64,000 nucleotides of DNA from Dendrobates tinctorius. Taxonomy: Eukaryota. Shown one piece after another: positions 47,901-55,914 of the stretch; within the stretch, counting starts at the first letter, position 1, and each line of letters starts with the position of its first letter. The position numbers were made by a program, and so were the translations under genes. Under the pieces are notes generated by a model, which saw only the letters and a list, made by a program, of their open reading frames with translations, did no database searches and had not been told where the DNA came from. The stretch covers positions 17,856,001-17,920,000 of the forward strand of contig NW_027361700.1 of NCBI RefSeq assembly GCF_039654945.1, read 5' to 3'.

Positions 47901-50876
47901 CAATCTTCCTGTTAGTGAGACATAGTGACAAGGCTTCCACGGTTCTTAGCGTAAAGAAAGTAGAGTTTAGACGTTATGAAATGGAGTGAACTCATGACCG
48001 AAGCTGGTAGAGATTTCACTGAAGTAAATGAGGGTGTTACTTAATAAAGGCAACCTTGTGGTTTGTTGCAGTGTAATATAAGGGGATTTTTTGGAATTTT
48101 ACAATCTGGGCAAAGCAACTAAGGCCACGTTCACACATTCAGTATTCAGTGAGTATTTTACCTCAGTATCTGTATGCCAAATCCAGGAGTGGGTGATAAA
48201 TCCAGAAGTGGTGACGTGTTTCTATTATACTTTTCCTCTGACTGTTCCACTCCTGGTTTTGGCTTACAAATACTGAGGTAAAATACTGACCAAATACTGA
48301 ACGTGTGAACGTGGCCCAGGAGTTGTGACAAACTTTTGCAACTTTCATTTTGATGCCACAGCTCATTCTGACTCAGGAGCATCTGACTCCACCACATAAG
48401 TTACGTAACCTCATCAAGACCAGTGGGAAAAATCACCAGTCTTGAACAATCGGTCCCTGGGGTTTTTAAGGTTTTTTGGAACCATAACTGAGCAAAAACG
48501 TTCCAAAACCTCTCCACGTCTCAAAACTCCAAAAAAACGTTGCGCTTCCACTCAGAAAACTCAGCAAAAACACTCGGTGTGAACATAGCCTTCAAAGGAT
48601 TTTTAAGCGTTTTTTTCCCCACACAGTGTTTTGCCCACCTTCTGACTTGGCATTGTCAAGTTTGGAGCAGATTCCATGATGAATTCACGCCAAATAAGTG
48701 ACGTCACTATTTTTTCTTTCCATTACAAGGATTTCAAAACCTCAAAAAAAAATCACTTTATAAACAGCAAAGTGGATTTTCCATCTAATTGAGTATTGAG
48801 AGAGTATATGAAGAATTTTTAAATGATTTTGAAACAATTAGCTCCCAAATCTTGCTAAGAAAAACACAAAAAAGCTTCATTTTGTTAACGTTCTTTTCAC
48901 TTTGCATTCATTTTAATGGAAAATGCACTTTTCTATCCATTCAAAGATTTTTTTTAGTTTTTTTTTCCCCCATGGGGTTTTGAAAAACTTGCCACAGAAA
49001 AAATGACCTGCCACTTTTTTTAGGTAAACGTTTCATGGAAACTACTTCACACTGACAGTCATAACACTTCTGAAAAAAAAATCTGTCAAATTGCTCTTCA
49101 AGGAAAAAAAAAAAGAAAAGGAGCATTTCTTGATGAGGATTTCTCTTGAAAAAAATTGCCAAATTTTTCCTCCTCTTAAAATCAGTGTGCCTTCCCCTTG
49201 AATTACCAGTACAGCAGTGATAGCGTCCCGTCCATCATTCCTGTGACCAATGCAGCAATTCACAGGTCAGACATCATCACTGCAGTATCTGATTCTAGGG
49301 ATAAATAATGTTGATCTCTTTATTTTTTTTAGCATTCCTTTCTCTTTGCTCTTTTTTAAAAAAAAAAAATAAAAGCTCGGAGAATCCTTTAGGCTTCACT
49401 GTTTTGTCAATATTTTACATCAGCATTTGTAAGCCAAAATCAGGAGTGGAACAGTCAGAAAAAGTATGATAGAAACACTGCTCCGCGTCTGCATTTTTCA
49501 CCCACTCCTGGTTTGGGCTTATAAATACTGATGTAAAATACTGACCGTGTGAATATGGCCTAAGGCTAGTTTCACACTAGTGTTCGGGAGGACTGCGTAC
49601 TTCCTCCTTTCGTCCTGTGTTAAGCCTCGCCCACTGCTGCACCTCTCCAATTCAGCTCCGCCTTTTGTCGGCATGCGTCCTGCATACCTATCTTTAGCAT
49701 TGGGTACTCAGGCCATGCGAATGTATGTGGATGCCTGCGCATGCGTCGTTTTGACACTGCACCGACCACAACAAAATGCAACATTTTGTGTTCGGCGCAG
49801 TTCGGTTTGACGCTGTCATGGCTGCCTAACTTTACATCTCCCCGGTTTTAATCTGGTGTTGTCAGTGACAGACTGGGAGTGAAATTCAACCATGGCATTT
49901 GAAAACACATCAGTCGATACTGTTCCTCCCCGATTCTCCGTCTCAGCTGCACCCTGAGGACGCTGATGCTGTTAATAGGATAGCAGACAAATCAGCCCAC
50001 AACTGGACCAGCCCGTCTGGCATTTGCCAGAATTGCCAGATGACCAGTCTGGCCCTGGGTGTTGTCCTTGTCAATCCACATGAAAGATTTAATTGCTAAA
50101 GACAGACTGTCAGTGTGTTCTGACTTCTCATTGCTCCTTAAAGAGGGTTGTTCACTGATAAGATATCGTTTACATCTTCCTAAGATTGGTCATCAATATC
50201 AGATTAGTGGGGGTCTGACTTCAGGGACTCTCACCGATCAGCTTTTATCAGCTTTGCAGAGCAGCTTCATAGGCTCAATGTTCAGAGCCAGAACATTATC
50301 TTTCCATACACCGTTCAGTAGCAGTTCATGAGTACTTCAGCTCAGGTAATACCGAAGTGAATTCATAGTGTGTCTGTAGGACTCTAAATGGCCAAAATTG
50401 TGCCTCCGACACAACTAAAACTTACTGTCCACAGTGACAAACTTGTATCTCTATCAGCGGATAAAACAACTCACAGTTCCTTTTCTTTAGAAGAATCATA
50501 CTCCTTTGTGGCCACCTTAGCCACCAGATCTTTCTCTTGCATCATGGTGTTCAGTCAGACACCTCAGACCTTGCTCCAGATTCCCTGAGTCAGGCTGGCA
50601 TCTGTCCACTCCCTGGGCAAATATTTACTTGAAGGTTATAAAGACTCTTTATGAGCTCAGGAGTGATGAGTATCATCATATGCCACAGGTCCTCTTTGCC
50701 AGACTAAGGCCTGTTTCACACATCCGTTTGACACCATCAGTCAAAATCCGCTGATTTGCAAAAAAAAACGGATCCGCCATTTATCTTGGCGGAGGATCCA
50801 TAGAATCATAGAATCGTAGAGTTGGAAGGGACCTCCTAGGCCATCTGGTCCAACCCCCTGCTCAAAGCAGGATTCA

Positions 50877-53798
50877 CTAAATCATCCCAGTCAGATGTCT
50901 GTCCAGCCTCTGTTTGAAGACTTCCATTGAAGGAGAACTCACCACTTCTCGTGGCAGCCTGTTCCACTCATTGATCACTCTAACTGTCAAAAAGTTTTTT
51001 CTAATATCTAATCTGTGTCTTCTCCCATTCAGTTTCATCCCATTGCTTCTAGTCTTTCCTTGTGCAAATGAGAATAAAGTTGATCCTTCTACAATGTGAC
51101 AGCCCTTTAGATATTTGTAGACAGCTATTAAGTCTCCTCTCAGTCTTCTCTTTTGCAAACTAAACATTCCCAAATCCTGCAACCTTTCCTCATAAGACAG
51201 GGTTTGCAGACCGGTCACCATTCTGGTCGCTCTTTTCTGAACTTGCTCCAGTTTGTTGATGTCTTTTTTAAAATGTGGTGCCCAAAACTGGACACAATAT
51301 TCCAGATGAGGTCTGACCAAAGAGGAGTAGAGGGAAATAATGACTTCACGTGATCTAGACTGTATGCTTCTGTTAATACATCCTAGAATTGCATTTGCCT
51401 TTTTTGCTGCTGCATCACACTGTTGACTCATATTCAGTCTGTGATCTATTAGTATACCCAAGTCTTTTTCACATGTGCTGTCACTTAGCCCTATTCCTCC
51501 CATTCTATATATGCTTTTTTCATTTTTATTGCCCAGATGTAGTACCTTGCATTTCTCCCTGTTAAAAACCATTCTGTTAGTTGCTGCCCACTTCTCCAGT
51601 TTATTTAAATCTTTTTGAATCCTCTCTCTCTCTTCTCTAGTATTAGCTATCCCTCCTAGCTTTGTGTCATCAGCAAATTTAATCAGTTTACCCTCAATTC
51701 CTTCATCTAAATCATTGATAAAGATGTTGAACAATACAGGGCCCAGGACAGAGCCCTGTGGTACCCCACTTGAGACATTCTTCCAACTGGATGTGCAGCC
51801 ATTTACGACCACTCTTTGGGTCCGATCACTAAGCCAGTTATGAATCCACCTAACAGTTGCCTTGTCCATTCCATACTTAGTCATTTTTTCAATAAGGATA
51901 GTATGAGAGACTTTGTCAAATGCTTTGCTGAAGTCAAGATATACTATATCTACAGCATTTACTTGATCCACCCAATCAGTTATACCGTCATAGAAGGAAA
52001 TTAAGTTAGTCTGACATGACTTATTAGTTACAAACCCATGCTGACTCTGTTTGATCACTTCATTCTTATCCAGGTATTGACATACATGTTGTCTAATAAT
52101 TTGTTCAAAGATCTTTCCTGGTATAGAAGTCAGACTCACCGGCCTATAGTTGCCTGGGTCCACCTTCTTCCCCTTTTTGAAGATAGGAACAACATTTGCT
52201 CTTCTCCAGTCTTCTGGCACTTCTCCTTTTCTCCAAGAATTTTCAAAGATTATGGAGAGGGGTTCAAAAATTTCTTCTGCTATCTCCTTCAGTACTCTGG
52301 GGTGTAATTCATCTGGACCTGGAGACTTGAATTCATTTAGGTTAGCTAAGTGTTTCCTCACTATCTTTCTGTTTATAGATATCCTGGATTCTTCTATTCC
52401 CTTAATAGGACAGTGAATAACAGTTGGTGTTACATTTCCTTTCTGAGAGAAAACAGATGCAAAATAGGAATTTAAAAGTTCAGCCTTCTCAACATCCTGT
52501 CTTACCATTTCATCATTTTCATCCTGTAAAAATCCTATAGCATCTTTGACTTTTCTTTTACTTTTGACATATCCCCAAAATCCTTTATTATTGCTTTTGA
52601 CATCTCTTGCAAGCCTCAATTCATTTTCAGCTTTAGATAATCTGATTTGTGCCCTGCAGGTTCTGCAGACAGCATTATATTCTTCTTTAGATATGCCTCC
52701 CTCTTTCCATTTTATAAACATTTTTTTCTTCCTTTTTAGCATGTGCTTAAGTTCTGTGTTCACCCATCCTGGTTTCCTTAAATGCTTCCTATTCTTCCCT
52801 CTTTTCGGAATTGTTAACAACTGTGCTTTGAGAATTTCATTTTTCAAGATTTCCCATCCTTCCTGGACATTTTTGTCTTTAAGGATATCAAGCCATTGGA
52901 TCCCTCCAATTCTCTTTCTGAATCCCTTAAAATCTGCCTTTCTGAAATCTAACCTTGACGTCTGAGTCTTCACAGGTCTTCCACCTCTAGTTATCCAAAA
53001 TTCTAAAATAGCATGGTCGCTACCTCCTAGGGTTCCAGCCACTTTTACCTCCTCAACCATTTCCTCCCTGTTTATAAGGATTAGATCCAAGGTAGCAGTT
53101 CCCCTTGTTTTCTCCCCTACCTTTTGGAAGATAAAGTTGTCAGCAAGAGAGGATAAGAATTTCCTTGACCTGTTAGTTTTGCCTGAGAGAGATTCCCAAC
53201 AAATGTCTGGATAGTTGAAATCTCCCATGACAACTATGTCATATTTTTTGGAGAACTTGGCCATTTGATGCATAAAGAGTTCATCCATATCTTCAGCTTG
53301 CACAGGCGGCCTGTAGTAAATGCCTACAATGGTGTCCTTTCCATTGTTCTGTCCTTGTATTCTTACCCAAACAGTTTCCACAGAACTCCCAGTCTCTGAA
53401 GCTTCAATCTCTGTGCAGATATACGCGTTTCTAACATACAATGCAACACCCCCTCCTCGTTTATCAAGTCTGTTTCTTGCAAATAAGTTGTATCCTTCTA
53501 GTCTTGTATTCCAATCATGTGTATTGTCCCACCAAGTTTCAGTGATTCCAATGACATCATATTTCTTTTCCTGTGTTAGTAGTTCCAATTCTCCTTGTTT
53601 GTTGCCCATGCTTTGTGCATTAGTATAGAAACATTTTAGTTTGTGATTGGTTTCTCTTTCTCCAATATTTTTATTAATTAGATTCTTTCGTCCTTGTTCT
53701 TCCTTTCCACTTCTAATAGCAGAGTTCTCAATAGCATTTGTCAGGTGAATGGCTTTTTCTGGTCTTTTGCTTCCCTTCCCATGTTGTTCTAGTTTAAA
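50877..53798 (-). CDS. CR1 ORF2p (APE endonuclease + reverse transcriptase); start uncertain, first ATG at 53609 lies inside the APE domain
   Basis: LKCFYTNAQS, ITETW, GDFN, SDH, YLDFSKAFD, GVPQGSVLGP, FADD; the frame is open from 53870 to 50877. Confidence 0.92.
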   Translation of the reverse strand, partial: FKLEQHGKGSKRPEKAIHLTNAIENSAIRSGKEEQGRKNLINKNIGERETNHKLKCFYTNAQSMGNKQGELELLTQEKKYDVIGITETWWDNTHDWNTRLEGYNLFARNRLDKRGGGVALYVRNAYICTEIEASETGSSVETVWVRIQGQNNGKDTIVGIYYRPPVQAEDMDELFMHQMAKFSKKYDIVVMGDFNYPDICWESLSGKTNRSRKFLSSLADNFIFQKVGEKTRGTATLDLILINREEMVEEVKVAGTLGGSDHAILEFWITRGGRPVKTQTSRLDFRKADFKGFRKRIGGIQWLDILKDKNVQEGWEILKNEILKAQLLTIPKRGKNRKHLRKPGWVNTELKHMLKRKKKMFIKWKEGGISKEEYNAVCRTCRAQIRLSKAENELRLARDVKSNNKGFWGYVKSKRKVKDAIGFLQDENDEMVRQDVEKAELLNSYFASVFSQKGNVTPTVIHCPIKGIEESRISINRKIVRKHLANLNEFKSPGPDELHPRVLKEIAEEIFEPLSIIFENSWRKGEVPEDWRRANVVPIFKKGKKVDPGNYRPVSLTSIPGKIFEQIIRQHVCQYLDKNEVIKQSQHGFVTNKSCQTNLISFYDGITDWVDQVNAVDIVYLDFSKAFDKVSHTILIEKMTKYGMDKATVRWIHNWLSDRTQRVVVNGCTSSWKNVSSGVPQGSVLGPVLFNIFINDLDEGIEGKLIKFADDTKLGGIANTREERERIQKDLNKLEKWAATNRMVFNREKCKVLHLGNKNEKSIYRMGGIGLSDSTCEKDLGILIDHRLNMSQQCDAAAKKANAILGCINRSIQSRSREVIISLYSSLVRPHLEYCVQFWAPHFKKDINKLEQVQKRATRMVTGLQTLSYEERLQDLGMFSLQKRRLRGDLIAVYKYLKGCHIVEGSTLFSFAQGKTRSNGMKLNGRRHRLDIRKNFLTVRVINEWNRLPREVVSSPSMEVFKQRLDRHLTGMI

Positions 53799-54751
53799 GC
53801 TCTCCTTACAAGTGTAGCAAGGCGACTTCCAAATACATGCTTTCCAGTCTTCGTAAGGTGCACCCCATCTCTAGCAAGTAGTCCATCGTATAAGTAGTTC
53901 ACTCCGTGATCCAGAAATCCAAATCGTTGCTGACGGCACCATCGACGTAGCCAGTTGTTCACCTGCAGAATCTTATTCCACCTCCTTGTTCCATGGCCAT
54001 CCACTGGGAGGATGGAAGAGAAGACCACCTGCGCTCCCAGTTCTTTCACTTTCTTGCCTAAGTCTTCAAAGTCTCTGCAGATGGTTTCCAGGTCGTTTCT
54101 TGCGGTGTCATTTGTCCCCACATGTAGTAGCAGGAATGGGTAGTCATCTGTAGGTCTGAAGAGTCCTGAGATCCTGTCAGACACATCTTTAATTTTTGCA
54201 CCTGGAAGACAGCACATTTCTCTTGAAGTTATATCCGGTCTGCAGATAGCGGCCTCTGTTCCTCTCAACAGGGAATCCCCCATGAACACCACTCTCCGTT
54301 TCTTCTTCACAACATTTCTCTTTCTCCATCCAGGAGGACTCTGAAGGCGTACAAGGTTGCTGTTTGTTGGCAAAGTCTTATCCTGATGTATTTCTTCATC
54401 GTTTTCCTGCGTGAGAGCCTGGTACTGGTTTCTGAGCAGTATGGGTGCTGACTGCCTCCTGATCCTCCTGCTTCTCTGGGTCACATGTCTCCATTCCTCT
54501 GTTTCTTCAGGTGCACTTCGAATTTCTTCTCTTTCTGTAACATGAAGAGATAATTCTGCTCTGTCCAAGAACTCTTCACCTTCCTTAATGATCTTCAACG
54601 TAGCTAACCTCTCTTCGAGATTTTGCAACTTTTCCTCCAACAGGGACACAAGCTTGCATTTGTGGCATGTGAAGTTTGGCTTTTCCACTGGTAAATCTGT
54701 GAACATGTAGCAAGAAATGCAGCTCACCAAATGGCTAATGGCCTCTTCCAT
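53789..54751 (-). CDS. CR1 ORF1p (zinc finger, coiled coil, SGNH esterase domain)
   Basis: CxxC..CxxC, heptad repeat, GDSLLRG, HVGTND, DGVHL; ends RALN*. Confidence 0.93.
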   Translation of the reverse strand: MEEAISHLVSCISCYMFTDLPVEKPNFTCHKCKLVSLLEEKLQNLEERLATLKIIKEGEEFLDRAELSLHVTEREEIRSAPEETEEWRHVTQRSRRIRRQSAPILLRNQYQALTQENDEEIHQDKTLPTNSNLVRLQSPPGWRKRNVVKKKRRVVFMGDSLLRGTEAAICRPDITSREMCCLPGAKIKDVSDRISGLFRPTDDYPFLLLHVGTNDTARNDLETICRDFEDLGKKVKELGAQVVFSSILPVDGHGTRRWNKILQVNNWLRRWCRQQRFGFLDHGVNYLYDGLLARDGVHLTKTGKHVFGSRLATLVRRALN

Positions 54752-54809: not shown

Positions 54810-55197
54810 TGGTTTTTCCGATTTCCTCTTTTCAGCTGCAACGGCCAAAACCCAGTGATCGTTGCGCTCGCGGAGACTCTTCACTTATCCCAGAAGGCAC
54901 TGGGAATATGCAAATGATCTCATCAAGACTCTTCCCCTGGTTTTCCGATTTCCTCTTTTCAGCTGCAGCGACCAAAACCCAGTGATCGTTGAGCTCGCGG
55001 AGACTCTTCACTTATCCCAGAAGGCACTGGGAATATGCAAATGATCTCCTCAAGACTCTTCCCCTGGTTTTCCGATTTCCTCTTTTCAGCTGCAACGGCC
55101 AAAACCCAGTGATCGTTGAGCTCGCGGAGACTCTTCACTTATCCCAGAAGGCACTGGGAATATGCAAATGATCTCCTCAAGACTCTTCCCCTGGTTT
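54810..55197 (-). repeat. Three tandem 127-bp monomers in the CR1 5'UTR
   Basis: Near-identical units with period 127; each contains ATGCAAAT (54908, 55035, 55162). Confidence 0.92.
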
Positions 55198-55914
55198 GAT
55201 CCGTTTTTTTCCCCATTGACTTTCATTATCGGCGGATTTTGACTGAGGATCGTCCGCTGCATCCGTATTTCTGCGGATCCGCCAAAATGTTGGCGTCCGC
55301 TGAGATCACCGAACGGACAATGCAACGTTTTTTTGGTGTCCTGATCCGTATTTTTCTCTTTTGCTACATGTTTAACCCTAAATCCAATCTGGCTGCTGGA
55401 TAAAATCTCTCTCTCTCTCTCCGTTCGTTTACACTGAGTTGCCCGTTCACGCTCCACGATCCCGTGACGTAATCCCGCGAGATGCCCGTTCACGCTCCAT
55501 GATCCCGCGAGATACCCATTCCTGCTCCATGATCCCGCGACATGCCTGTTCACGCTCCACGATCCCGCTCCATGATCCCGAGATATCCCGTTCACGCTCC
55601 ATGATCCCGCGATATGCCCTCTCTTTCGGATACCGCTACATCGCCAGTATTTTTTTTTCGTTTTCGTTTTCAGGCGCGGTTCCTTTAAAATTACCGTATC
55701 GGCGGATCCCAGTGCATCAACGGTCTGGTGGCTCCCGTTGGTGTTTCATGGGCCACGGATCCGTTTTCCGCCATTTTGGTGGATTTCGACTGACCTGAAA
55801 AACTGAAGTGTGAAACAGGCCTAAACAGGAGGCCAAAATCTGATGGGACAAGGAATCAGATCCAGCCCTTATACAAGTCCAATACAATACAACACCAAAA
55901 CAATAACACTATTA

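What the first reader, a model, noticed from the sequence alone, without database searches (positions are those of the whole stretch)
53600..53875. Candidate programmed -1 ribosomal frameshift (U_UUA_AAC) fusing CR1 ORF1 to ORF2
Seen: ORF1 ends GCT TTA AAC TAG, so the heptamer T TTA AAC (plus-strand 53792-53798) sits in X_XXY_YYZ register directly before the stop. ORF2 is in the -1 frame and is open from 53870 across the junction. It has no ATG until 53609, which is after the first conserved APE motif (LKCFYTNAQS|M), so initiating there would truncate the endonuclease. The only ATG between the ORF1 stop and 53609 that follows closely (53782) is out of ORF2 frame. Established: UUUAAAC is the coronavirus slippery sequence, whereas L1-type ORF2 is made by termination-reinitiation. 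Inference: this LINE makes a gag-pol-like ORF1-ORF2 fusion (...RALKLEQHG... or ...RAFKLEQHG...). I see no strong 3' pseudoknot; the adjacent stop may provide the pause. I cannot say whether this has already been reported for CR1.
Basis: partly seen in the sequence, partly recalled or inferred. Interest (0 to 1): 0.8.

Follow-up and report, generated by a model that had tools for sequence, protein, structure and literature searches.

The report
Conserved -1 frameshift site in CR1 LINEs
An intact CR1 jumping gene in a poison-frog genome joins its two genes through a classic slippery sequence (U_UUA_AAC plus stop) that frogs, turtles, lizards, snakes, crocodilians and birds keep letter for letter, which suggests its reverse transcriptase is made by ribosomal frameshifting as a fusion protein, as retroviruses make Gag-Pol.

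Summary
A full-length CR1 LINE lies on the minus strand. ORF1 ends GCT TTA AAC TAG, so the heptamer T_TTA_AAC (53798-53792) sits in X_XXY_YYZ register directly before the stop. ORF2 (endonuclease and reverse transcriptase) is in the -1 frame, and its first in-frame ATG (53609) falls after the catalytic Asn motif.

Comparison with other species supports the interpretation:
- In 17 representative CR1 lineages (42-82% nucleotide identity), the last two ORF1 codons are TTA AAC in 16. TTA makes up only 6.9% of Leu codons elsewhere in these genes.
- The preceding base is T in 15 lineages, even where the amino acid differs, and G in 2 (G_UUA_AAC, the form I recall from equine arteritis virus).
- The stop follows directly but varies (TAG, TGA, TAA).
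- ORF2 is in the -1 frame and usually has no usable AUG.
- A peptide (G-E-G-D) starting 5 codons after the slip site is conserved with synonymous variation.

I found no conserved downstream RNA structure. No frameshift product has been shown.

Best reading (about 0.75): a conserved programmed -1 frameshift makes an ORF1-ORF2 fusion. I found no report of this for CR1 in the searchable literature; the 1997 CR1 papers could not be read. First-stage readers flagged the same heptamer in at least seven other copies in this genome.

The parts
54814..55197 (-). 5' UTR of the CR1 element: three copies of a 127-bp monomer, ending about 60 nt before the ORF1 ATG
   Evidence: Tandem Repeats Finder reports period 127, 3.0 copies, 97% matches.
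53789..54751 (-). ORF1 (320 aa plus stop): a Cys-rich knuckle, a coiled-coil region and a GDSL/SGNH esterase domain. It ends ...R-R-A-L-N-stop.
   Evidence: Pfam Lipase_GDSL_2 at E=3e-7, 31.4 bits, just under the 32.9 cut-off. It is 98% identical to a 320-aa Dendrobates tinctorius protein. The C-terminal L-N is at least 90% conserved in a 32-protein alignment.
53792..53798 (-). Slippery heptamer U_UUA_AAC in X_XXY_YYZ register of ORF1 (P-site UUA Leu, A-site AAC Asn)
   Evidence: Sequence. In 17 lineage representatives TTA is kept in 16, AAC in 16 and the leading T in 15. The exact NNTTTAAAC is present in 64 of 73 copies whose ORF1 tail aligns to its end. No variant at 10% or more and no indel at 53789-53800 in contigs of four runs from two organisms.
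53789..53791 (-). ORF1 stop codon (TAG) immediately 3' of the heptamer. Its position is conserved but its identity is not (TAG, TGA or TAA in other lineages).
53770..53780 (-). Purine/G-rich tract GGGAAGGGAAG, 9-19 nt after the stop. In the ORF2 frame it encodes G-K-G-S, which corresponds to G-E-G-D in most other lineages.
   Evidence: The tract recurs in all lineages. In the -1 frame, codon positions 1 and 2 are nearly fixed (entropy 0.23) while position 3 varies (0.90).
50877..53792 (-). ORF2 as entered by a -1 shift: a 54-codon linker, an apurinic-type endonuclease and a reverse transcriptase, 971 codons to the stop
   Evidence: Pfam Exo_endo_phos 2e-16, Exo_endo_phos_2 1e-10, RVT_1 8e-35. 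The frame is open for 971 codons from the slip site.
53607..53630 (-). First endonuclease motif F-Y-T-N-A-Q-S (catalytic Asn codon 53621-53619), followed by the first in-frame ATG of ORF2 (53609-53607)
50799..50876 (-). 3' UTR of CR1 type: an inverted repeat, then two copies of the octamer GATTCTAT at the 3' end
   Evidence: Sequence read.

Best explanation
The junction is a conserved programmed -1 ribosomal frameshift signal.

Proposed mechanism (all inferred):
- Most ribosomes translating ORF1 read ...GCU UUA AAC and terminate at the adjacent stop, producing the esterase-type ORF1 protein.
- A minority slip back one base, with tRNA-Leu on UUA in the P site and tRNA-Asn on AAC in the A site. 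The tRNAs re-pair on UUU and AAA.
- These ribosomes continue with CUA (Leu) in the ORF2 frame and produce an ORF1-ORF2 fusion (...RRALN-LEQHG...) that carries the endonuclease and reverse transcriptase.
- This would set a low ORF2:ORF1 ratio, as Gag-Pol frameshifting does in retroviruses.
- No 3' hairpin is detectable, so the adjacent stop codon or the G-rich tract may be the only local stimulators, and efficiency is probably low.

Shown here: the anatomy, the frames, nucleotide-level conservation across tetrapod CR1 lineages, and the lack of a conserved AUG.
Not shown: the slippage itself, the fusion product and its efficiency.
For: 1. The heptamer is in the correct register with ORF2 in the -1 frame.

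2. The same arrangement occurs in many lineages:
- Chelydra (TAG), Zootoca (TGA), ostrich (TAG), alligator (TAA) and a snake (TAG);
- two unnamed Logan contigs (TGA);
- about 60 bird-like copies from a metagenome.

3. Synonymous sites are constrained in 14 representatives (42-81% nucleotide identity):
- Other conserved Leu columns use 4-6 different codons, and TTA is 6.9% of Leu codons. The penultimate codon is TTA in 13 of 14.
- The last codon is AAC in 13 of 14, against 56% of Asn codons elsewhere.
- The preceding third position is T in 14 of 14, even where the amino acid is Ser or Leu.
- The one exception is a copy changed in both slippery codons (GCT TTG AAT).

4. The stop codon varies in identity but always follows the heptamer directly.

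5. Entry into the ORF2 frame is confined to a short window:
- Several bird families have -1-frame stops only 9-12 nt upstream of the last base of the heptamer.
- In frog, turtle, snake, two of the three unnamed Logan/ENA contigs checked (L087, L090) and most bird copies there is no in-frame ATG before the endonuclease Asn motif.

6. The peptide L-x3-G-E-G-D directly after the slip site is conserved with third-position variation in the -1 frame. This indicates that the ORF2 frame is translated from within about 4 codons of the heptamer.

7. U_UUA_AAC is listed among the most shift-prone heptamers for mammalian ribosomes (PMC5009743).
Against: - There is no direct evidence for a frameshift product.
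- No significant or conserved RNA structure lies downstream. The z-scores of 120-nt folds in 10 lineages range from +2.2 to -1.3, and RNAalifold finds 0 pairs across 12 lineages. These tools cannot see pseudoknots, long-range pairing or protein stimulators.
- Two intact elements of one lineage (L090, L091) have G_UUA_AAC, so heptamer position 1 is not universal.
- Strict adjacency of the stop also fits termination-coupled reinitiation. Human L1 ORF2 is known to be translated without needing an AUG.
- Part of the conservation could reflect a requirement for the ORF1p C-terminus (A-L-N).
Confidence: 0.75

Rival explanations
1. ORF2 is made by termination-reinitiation without an AUG, as in human L1. 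Ribosomes finish ORF1 at the stop, stay on the RNA and restart nearby in the ORF2 frame. The sequence around the stop would be conserved because it retains the ribosome, and its resemblance to a slippery heptamer would be coincidental.
For: - The stop is always directly at the junction, and ORF2 coding constraint begins within a few codons of it.
- There is no strong 3' frameshift stimulator.
- A few lineages have an ORF2-frame ATG 5-8 nt after the stop (ostrich L004, L026).
- Reinitiation is the documented mechanism in L1 and SART1 (PMC3708506; PMC2699510).
Against: - The conserved motif is exactly a canonical heptamer in exactly the right register. Only about 64 of 16,384 7-mers fit XXXYYYZ (my arithmetic, not a tool result).
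- TTA is used instead of the synonymous CTA, and the T before it persists through amino-acid changes. Tandem tRNA re-pairing predicts both; reinitiation predicts neither.
- An ORF2-frame ATG within 40 nt of the stop occurs in only 2 of 17 lineages.
- No UGGGA motif (calicivirus type) sits at a fixed upstream position.
Confidence: 0.15
2. The terminal GCT TTA AAC is conserved for a reason unrelated to ORF2 translation, such as an RNA or DNA element or a codon-level constraint on the ORF1p tail. ORF2 would then start by internal or non-AUG initiation in the linker.
For: - The ORF1p tail R-R-A-L-N is conserved at the protein level.
- A conserved G-rich tract follows the stop.
- No frameshift stimulator was found.
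Against: - Protein-level constraint does not explain fixed synonymous sites.
- No start codon, cognate or near-cognate, is conserved at one position in the linker.
- -1-frame stops lie 9-12 nt upstream of the last base of the heptamer, and coding constraint starts 5 codons downstream. Only about 25 nt, centred on the heptamer, remain for frame entry.
Confidence: 0.07
3. The heptamer is a chance occurrence in a short ORF overlap and has no function.
For: - TTTAAAC is common: 10 copies in the window against 12.7 expected.
- By my own rough arithmetic (not a tool result), any XXXYYYZ heptamer in register within a 26-codon overlap has a chance of roughly 10% in a single copy.
Against: It is conserved across lineages whose synonymous sites are otherwise saturated. 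The per-lineage chance of NNT TTA AAC, given the amino acids, is about 0.226 x 0.069 x 0.556, or roughly 0.009.
Confidence: 0.02

Closest known systems
Retroviral gag-pol / pro-pol -1 frameshift sites (Rous sarcoma virus A_AAU_UUA followed directly by the gag UAG; U_UUA_AAC in deltaretroviruses and coronaviruses)
   Same: - A canonical X_XXY_YYZ heptamer at the very end of the upstream ORF, with the polymerase ORF in the -1 frame.
- The product would be a structural-protein/polymerase fusion made in small amounts.
- U_UUA_AAC is among the most shift-prone heptamers (PMC5009743). RSV frameshifts 'near the end of gag' at about 5% (same review).
- The RSV sequence detail and the deltaretrovirus usage are from my memory and were not checked here.
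   Different: - The element is a non-LTR retrotransposon with an esterase-type ORF1, not a Gag.
- No stem-loop or pseudoknot is detectable downstream, whereas the retroviral and coronaviral sites depend on one.
- No protease is present to cleave a fusion.
Equine arteritis virus ORF1a/1b slip site G_UUA_AAC
   Same: Two intact CR1 elements (L090, L091) carry exactly G_UUA_AAC plus a stop, with ORF2 in the -1 frame.
   Different: The viral site works with a pseudoknot. That G_UUA_AAC is the EAV sequence comes from my memory; the review passage I read names the virus only in a truncated sentence.
Human L1 ORF2 translation (unconventional, AUG-independent termination-reinitiation) and Bombyx SART1 (UAAUG stop-start coupling)
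   Same: A bicistronic LINE RNA on which ORF2 must be reached by ribosomes that have translated ORF1, and ORF2 is made in low amounts.
   Different: - L1 has an inter-ORF spacer and no frame relationship is required. SART1 has an overlapping UAAUG.
- CR1 has neither a conserved AUG nor a spacer, but does have a conserved slippery heptamer.
- Reinitiation gives separate proteins, whereas a frameshift gives a fusion.
Luteovirus/dianthovirus frameshift sites with an adjacent stop (BYDV G_GGU_UUU UAG)
   Same: The slip site is directly followed by the upstream ORF's stop codon (from memory).
   Different: These viruses use a nearby bulged stem-loop paired to a distant 3' element (PMC5009743). Nothing comparable was found here, and long-range pairing could not be tested.

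Membership tests
CR1-clade LINE (non-LTR retrotransposon) | ORF2 with an N-terminal apurinic-type endonuclease and a reverse transcriptase | tested here: met
   Pfam Exo_endo_phos 2e-16 and RVT_1 8e-35.
CR1-clade LINE (non-LTR retrotransposon) | Esterase-type (SGNH/GDSL) ORF1 with an N-terminal Cys-rich motif | tested here: met
   Lipase_GDSL_2 at E=3e-7, 31.4 bits against a 32.9 cut-off. There are 125 homologues in frogs, turtles, squamates, crocodilians and birds, many named SGNH esterase. PMC13343379 states that esterase ORF1 is the only type in CR1 and L2.
CR1-clade LINE (non-LTR retrotransposon) | 3' UTR ending in a hairpin-forming inverted repeat plus an 8-nt microsatellite (ATTCTRTG type) | tested here: met
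   The sequence at 50876-50799 ends in two copies of GATTCTAT after an inverted repeat. That this is the CR1 hallmark rests on my knowledge of the family.
Canonical eukaryotic -1 programmed ribosomal frameshift signal | X_XXY_YYZ heptamer in the zero-frame register of the upstream ORF | tested here: met
   GC[T TTA AAC] TAG at 53798-53792.
Canonical eukaryotic -1 programmed ribosomal frameshift signal | The downstream ORF is in the -1 frame, is open across the site, and has no independent start of its own | tested here: met
   Among other copies with both ORFs detectable, 41 of 60 are in the -1 frame. I attribute the rest to indels in decayed copies but did not check them individually.
Canonical eukaryotic -1 programmed ribosomal frameshift signal | Phylogenetic conservation of the heptamer beyond what the encoded amino acids require | tested here: met
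   TTA in 16 of 17, AAC in 16 of 17 and leading T in 15 of 17 representatives. Other conserved Leu columns use 4-6 codons.
Canonical eukaryotic -1 programmed ribosomal frameshift signal | A stimulatory RNA structure (stem-loop or pseudoknot) 5-9 nt downstream | tested here: inconclusive
   No significant fold in 10 lineages, no consensus pairs and no Rfam frameshift element. Pseudoknots, long-range pairing, G-rich or rRNA interactions and trans-acting factors cannot be assessed with these tools.
Canonical eukaryotic -1 programmed ribosomal frameshift signal | A demonstrated transframe protein product | not testable with these tools
   This needs a reporter assay, mass spectrometry or ribosome profiling. 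The runs found are contigs, and none is on record as RNA.
Termination-reinitiation of SART1 / calicivirus type | An overlapping or closely adjacent stop and AUG in the downstream frame | tested here: not met
   An ORF2-frame ATG within 40 nt of the stop occurs in only 2 of 17 lineages and not in the window copy.
Termination-reinitiation of SART1 / calicivirus type | A conserved upstream 18S-complementary motif (UGGGA) at a fixed distance | tested here: not met
   It is absent within 120 nt upstream in 7 of 17 lineages, including the window copy, and its positions vary in the others.

The most novel reading that the evidence does not exclude
CR1-group LINEs as a whole may express their reverse transcriptase only as an ORF1-ORF2 fusion made by translational recoding, a Gag-Pol-like strategy in non-LTR retrotransposons. 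Tetrapod CR1 would use a structure-independent -1 frameshift at (U/G)_UUA_AAC, stimulated by the adjacent stop codon and perhaps the G-rich tract. Related fish elements would use read-through of a single in-frame UGA-C stop. The frameshift signal would then have been kept since before frogs and amniotes diverged.
Probability: 0.45. Interest if true: 0.85.

Novelty: new member of a known kind. Interest (0 to 1): 0.72.

Why it matters
How LINEs translate ORF2 from a bicistronic RNA is a long-standing open question. A 2013 paper still calls the mechanism 'not clear' (PMC3708506). CR1 is the dominant retrotransposon of birds, crocodilians, turtles, snakes and many amphibians.

A conserved canonical frameshift signal would have four consequences:
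- It would give CR1 a defined ORF2 expression mechanism that a simple reporter can test.
- It predicts an esterase-endonuclease-RT fusion protein, which changes how the CR1 ribonucleoprotein and cis-preference should be modelled.
- It extends -1 frameshifting from retroviruses and LTR elements to a major non-LTR family.
- It offers a vertebrate example of a slip site that may work without a nearby RNA structure.

It also matters for annotation. CR1 ORF2 should not be called from its first ATG.

Tried and rejected
- Downstream structure: single-sequence folds of 120 nt in 10 lineages and RNAalifold on 12 lineages found nothing significant or shared. A 7-bp hairpin about 30 nt downstream in some bird families (L010, L026) is not kept in the main bird family, by eye in the sequences. 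A G-quadruplex seems unlikely as a general stimulator, because the frog copy has only two GGG tracts.
- Rfam: no frameshift-element family. The only hit was a chance lncRNA match at E=0.9.
- Transcriptional slippage: rejected. The site has no homopolymer longer than 3, and contigs from four runs show no indel at the junction. These are contigs and none is on record as RNA, so they say nothing about expression.
- Calicivirus or SART1-type reinitiation signals: not present.
- Non-AUG start at the CUG created by AAC+UGA: rejected as a general mechanism, because lineages with TAG or TAA have CUA there.
- Literature: nine full-text searches and targeted reading found no report of CR1 frameshifting (PMC5009743, PMC13343379, PMC4120745, PMC4316615, PMC4255032, PMC3708506, PMC1947958, PMC11835228). 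Haas et al. 1997 and 2001 and Kojima et al. 2005 were not held, and the Kajikawa 1997 turtle CR1 paper was not available to me either. Prior mention in those papers cannot be excluded.
- Ranitomeya copy L001 and alligator copy L005: both are decayed. L001 has a deletion before the heptamer and reads GCG TTA AAC. In L005, ORF2 switches frame after a G-run. I used them only for the heptamer itself.
Only per-column counts over natural copies were used.


Full report
**What is in the window**

A full-length CR1 LINE lies on the minus strand between about 55197 and 50799.
- The 5' UTR consists of three 127-bp monomers (54814-55197).
- ORF1 runs from the ATG at 54751 to the TAG at 53791-53789. It has a Cys-rich N-terminus and a GDSL/SGNH esterase domain (Pfam E=3e-7).
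- ORF2 carries an apurinic-type endonuclease and a reverse transcriptase (2e-16 and 8e-35) and ends at 50877.
- The 3' UTR ends in an inverted repeat followed by two GATTCTAT octamers, which is the usual CR1 tail.
- The best ORF1 match is a 320-aa Dendrobates tinctorius protein at 98% identity, so the window is very probably from that frog or a close relative.

**Checking the observation**

- ORF1 ends GCT TTA AAC TAG. The heptamer T_TTA_AAC occupies 53798-53792 in X_XXY_YYZ register.
- The ORF2 frame is -1 relative to ORF1. It is closed by a TAG at 53873-53871, open from 53870, and runs 971 codons from the last base of the heptamer.
- Its first in-frame ATG is at 53609, immediately after F-Y-T-N-A-Q-S. 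The Pfam endonuclease match begins at the next residue, at profile position 14 of 225. A protein started there would lack the first motif with its conserved Asn.
- The ATG at 53782 is in the ORF1 frame.
- One correction applies. With standard tandem slippage both slippery codons are decoded in the zero frame, so the junction would read ...RRALN|LEQHG....
- The heptamer on its own is unremarkable: 10 in the window against 12.7 expected. A single copy proves little.

**Comparative evidence**

I fetched DNA around ORF1 homologues found by protein similarity, not by the heptamer. I also fetched 80 host-derived CR1 copies from JGI metagenome contigs, almost all from one sample, whose ORF1s are closest to avian ones.

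| Source | Locus | ORF1 end | ORF2 frame |
|---|---|---|---|
| Chelydra (turtle) | L002 | GCT TTA AAC TAG | -1 |
| Zootoca (lizard) | L003 | GCT TTA AAC TGA | -1 |
| Ostrich | L004 | GCT TTA AAC TAG | -1 |
| Alligator | L005 | GCT TTA AAC TAA | decayed copy, see below |
| Erythrolamprus (snake) | L088 | GCT TTA AAC TAG | -1 |
| Unnamed Logan contig | L092 | GCT TTA AAC TGA | -1 |
| Unnamed Logan contig | L087 | CTT TTA AAC TGA | -1 |

- In L087 the ORF1 is only 34% identical to the frog's.
- Of 73 copies whose ORF1 tail aligns to its end, 64 have the exact NNTTTAAAC followed directly by a stop. The nine exceptions differ by one or two bases, as expected of decaying copies.
- Of 60 copies in which both ORFs were detectable, 41 have ORF2 in the -1 frame. 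I attribute the rest to indels in decayed copies but did not check each one.
- In the alligator copy, the stretch just after the heptamer reads L-S-P-L-E-D-G-G-D in the -1 frame. The frame then switches after a G-run, which I read as an indel in that old copy.

**Synonymous-site test**

I used 14 representatives with pairwise nucleotide identity of 42-81% over the last 149 ORF1 codons.
- Conserved Leu columns elsewhere use 4-6 different codons, and third-position conservation in conserved degenerate columns is 0.36-0.86.
- The last three codons show third-position T in 14 of 14 (GCT twelve times, but also TCT and CTT where the amino acid differs), TTA in 13 of 14 and AAC in 13 of 14.
- The single exception (L062, GCT TTG AAT) is changed in both slippery codons.
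- Elsewhere in the same sequences TTA is 6.9% of Leu codons, T is 22.6% of third positions and AAC is 55.6% of Asn codons. The chance of this nonamer per independent lineage, given the amino acids, is about 0.009.
- TTA is used rather than the synonymous CTA, and the preceding T persists through amino-acid changes. Re-pairing of a P-site tRNA-Leu on UUU requires both. A constraint on the ORF1 protein tail would require neither.
- Three further lineages were added afterwards. L092 has the standard form. L090 and L091, from two different metagenomes and 82% identical to each other, both carry an intact ORF1 and a -1-frame ORF2 that stays open to the end of the contig. They read GAG TTA AAC TGA, that is G_UUA_AAC.
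- Position 1 is therefore T in 15 of 17 representatives and G in 2. As I recall, G_UUA_AAC is the natural slip site of equine arteritis virus, so this is a tolerated variant rather than a loss.

**Where the ORF2 frame can be entered**

- In the main bird family a -1-frame TGA lies 12 nt upstream of the last base of the heptamer. In another family TGA and TAG lie 9 nt upstream.
- Downstream, no in-frame ATG occurs before the endonuclease Asn motif in frog, turtle, snake, L087, L090 and most bird copies. ATGs in lizard, ostrich, L091, L092 and some others sit at non-homologous positions.
- Five to eight codons after the slip site, the peptide G-E-G-D (G-K-G-S in the frog) is conserved. Entropy is 0.23 at codon positions 1 and 2 and 0.90 at position 3 in the -1 frame, with GAA/GAG, GGA/GGG/GGT and GAC/GAT alternating.
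- This pattern suggests protein-level selection in the ORF2 frame that starts almost at the heptamer. The frame switch is thereby confined to roughly 25 nt centred on the heptamer.

**Stimulators**

- The 120 nt downstream fold no better than shuffled controls in ten lineages (z from +2.2 to -1.3).
- RNAalifold finds no shared pair from the heptamer to +80 in twelve lineages.
- Rfam has nothing.
- The only conserved neighbours are the stop codon, whose position is fixed while its identity varies, and the G-rich tract. The tract may simply be the G-E-G-D codons.
- A frameshift here would therefore probably be inefficient, which fits a LINE that needs very little ORF2p. Alternatively it may depend on something these tools cannot see, such as a pseudoknot, long-range pairing or trans factors.

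**Within-genome variation**

Contigs of four public runs from two organisms cover the junction, 488 pieces in one run. They show no variant at 10% or more and no indel at 53789-53800, while flanking sites vary. None of the runs is on record as RNA, so this says nothing about expression. First-stage readers independently flagged the same heptamer in at least seven other copies on other pieces of this genome.

**Rival explanations**

- AUG-independent termination-reinitiation, as in human L1, remains the main alternative (0.15). It explains the fixed stop position and the lack of structure. It does not explain why the conserved letters form a canonical heptamer in the correct register, nor the TTA/T preferences.
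- The hallmarks of SART1 or calicivirus-type coupling are absent.
- Conservation for an unrelated reason combined with internal initiation (0.07) and pure chance (0.02) fit poorly.

**What is known**

- The 2016 recoding review lists U_UUA_AAC among the most shift-prone heptamers. For non-LTR elements it discusses only the Drosophila telomeric HeT-A and TART (PMC5009743).
- A 2026 survey of CR1-group elements, the 2014 ORF1 study and the 2015 amniote CR1 paper do not mention a frameshift or an overlap.
- A 2013 paper states that the mechanism of ORF2 translation in non-LTRs is unclear.
- For ciliate LINEs, +1 frameshifting or read-through has been suggested from consensus sequences (PMC5405496).
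- The original chicken and turtle CR1 descriptions (1997) were not available to me, so an early remark on the -1 overlap cannot be ruled out.

**Verdict**

I file it as a new member of a known kind: a canonical -1 frameshift signal in a class of element where none is established. It has clear consequences for LINE biology and a simple decisive experiment.

Noticed in passing
L006:4001-8873 (Paramormyrops kingsleyae) and L089:288-1272: In a fish CR1-group element, ORF1 (esterase type, 28% identical to the frog's) and an ORF2 open for more than 1000 codons are in the same frame. A single UGA separates them (TGC TGA CTA). A second, divergent fish-like element has UGA CAA, followed in frame by a homologous peptide (TRAK.R..Q..RLN). 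This looks like stop-codon read-through in a UGA-C context, which would also yield an ORF1-ORF2 fusion.
   Followed up: partly
L090:1629-1640 and L091:1265-1276: Two intact CR1 elements from different ENA metagenomes carry GAG TTA AAC TGA (G_UUA_AAC) instead of U_UUA_AAC. ORF2 is again in the -1 frame, and the peptide after the site is L-S-E-E-G-E-G-G in L090 and L-S-E-M-G-M-G-G in L091.
   Followed up: partly
window:54814-55197: The CR1 5' UTR is built of three 127-bp tandem monomers (97% matches), reminiscent of the monomeric promoters of mouse L1. Further 30-bp and 42-bp repeats lie just upstream at 55472-55610.
   Followed up: no
window:53770-53780 and homologous positions in L002-L092: A G-rich tract (GGGGGAAGGGGA in birds, GGGAAGGGAAG in the frog) 9-19 nt after the ORF1 stop recurs in all lineages and encodes G-E-G-D in the ORF2 frame. 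Whether it acts as RNA, for example as a frameshift stimulator, or only as peptide is open.
   Followed up: partly
L087 (Logan SRR28408689): The N-terminal half of this ORF1 resembles lizard CR1 ORF1s, but its esterase half resembles a bichir (Erpetoichthys) protein. This is consistent with the reticulate, modular ORF1 evolution described by Metcalfe and Casane. The slippery site is nevertheless retained.
   Followed up: no
one search hit list: Many CR1 ORF1 esterases are annotated in public databases as parts of host genes (sarcosine dehydrogenase, steryl-sulfatase, NUBP1, 'replicase polyprotein 1a' in Varanus), and one as a Klebsiella pneumoniae SGNH hydrolase. These are probably gene-model chimeras and contamination.
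   Followed up: no
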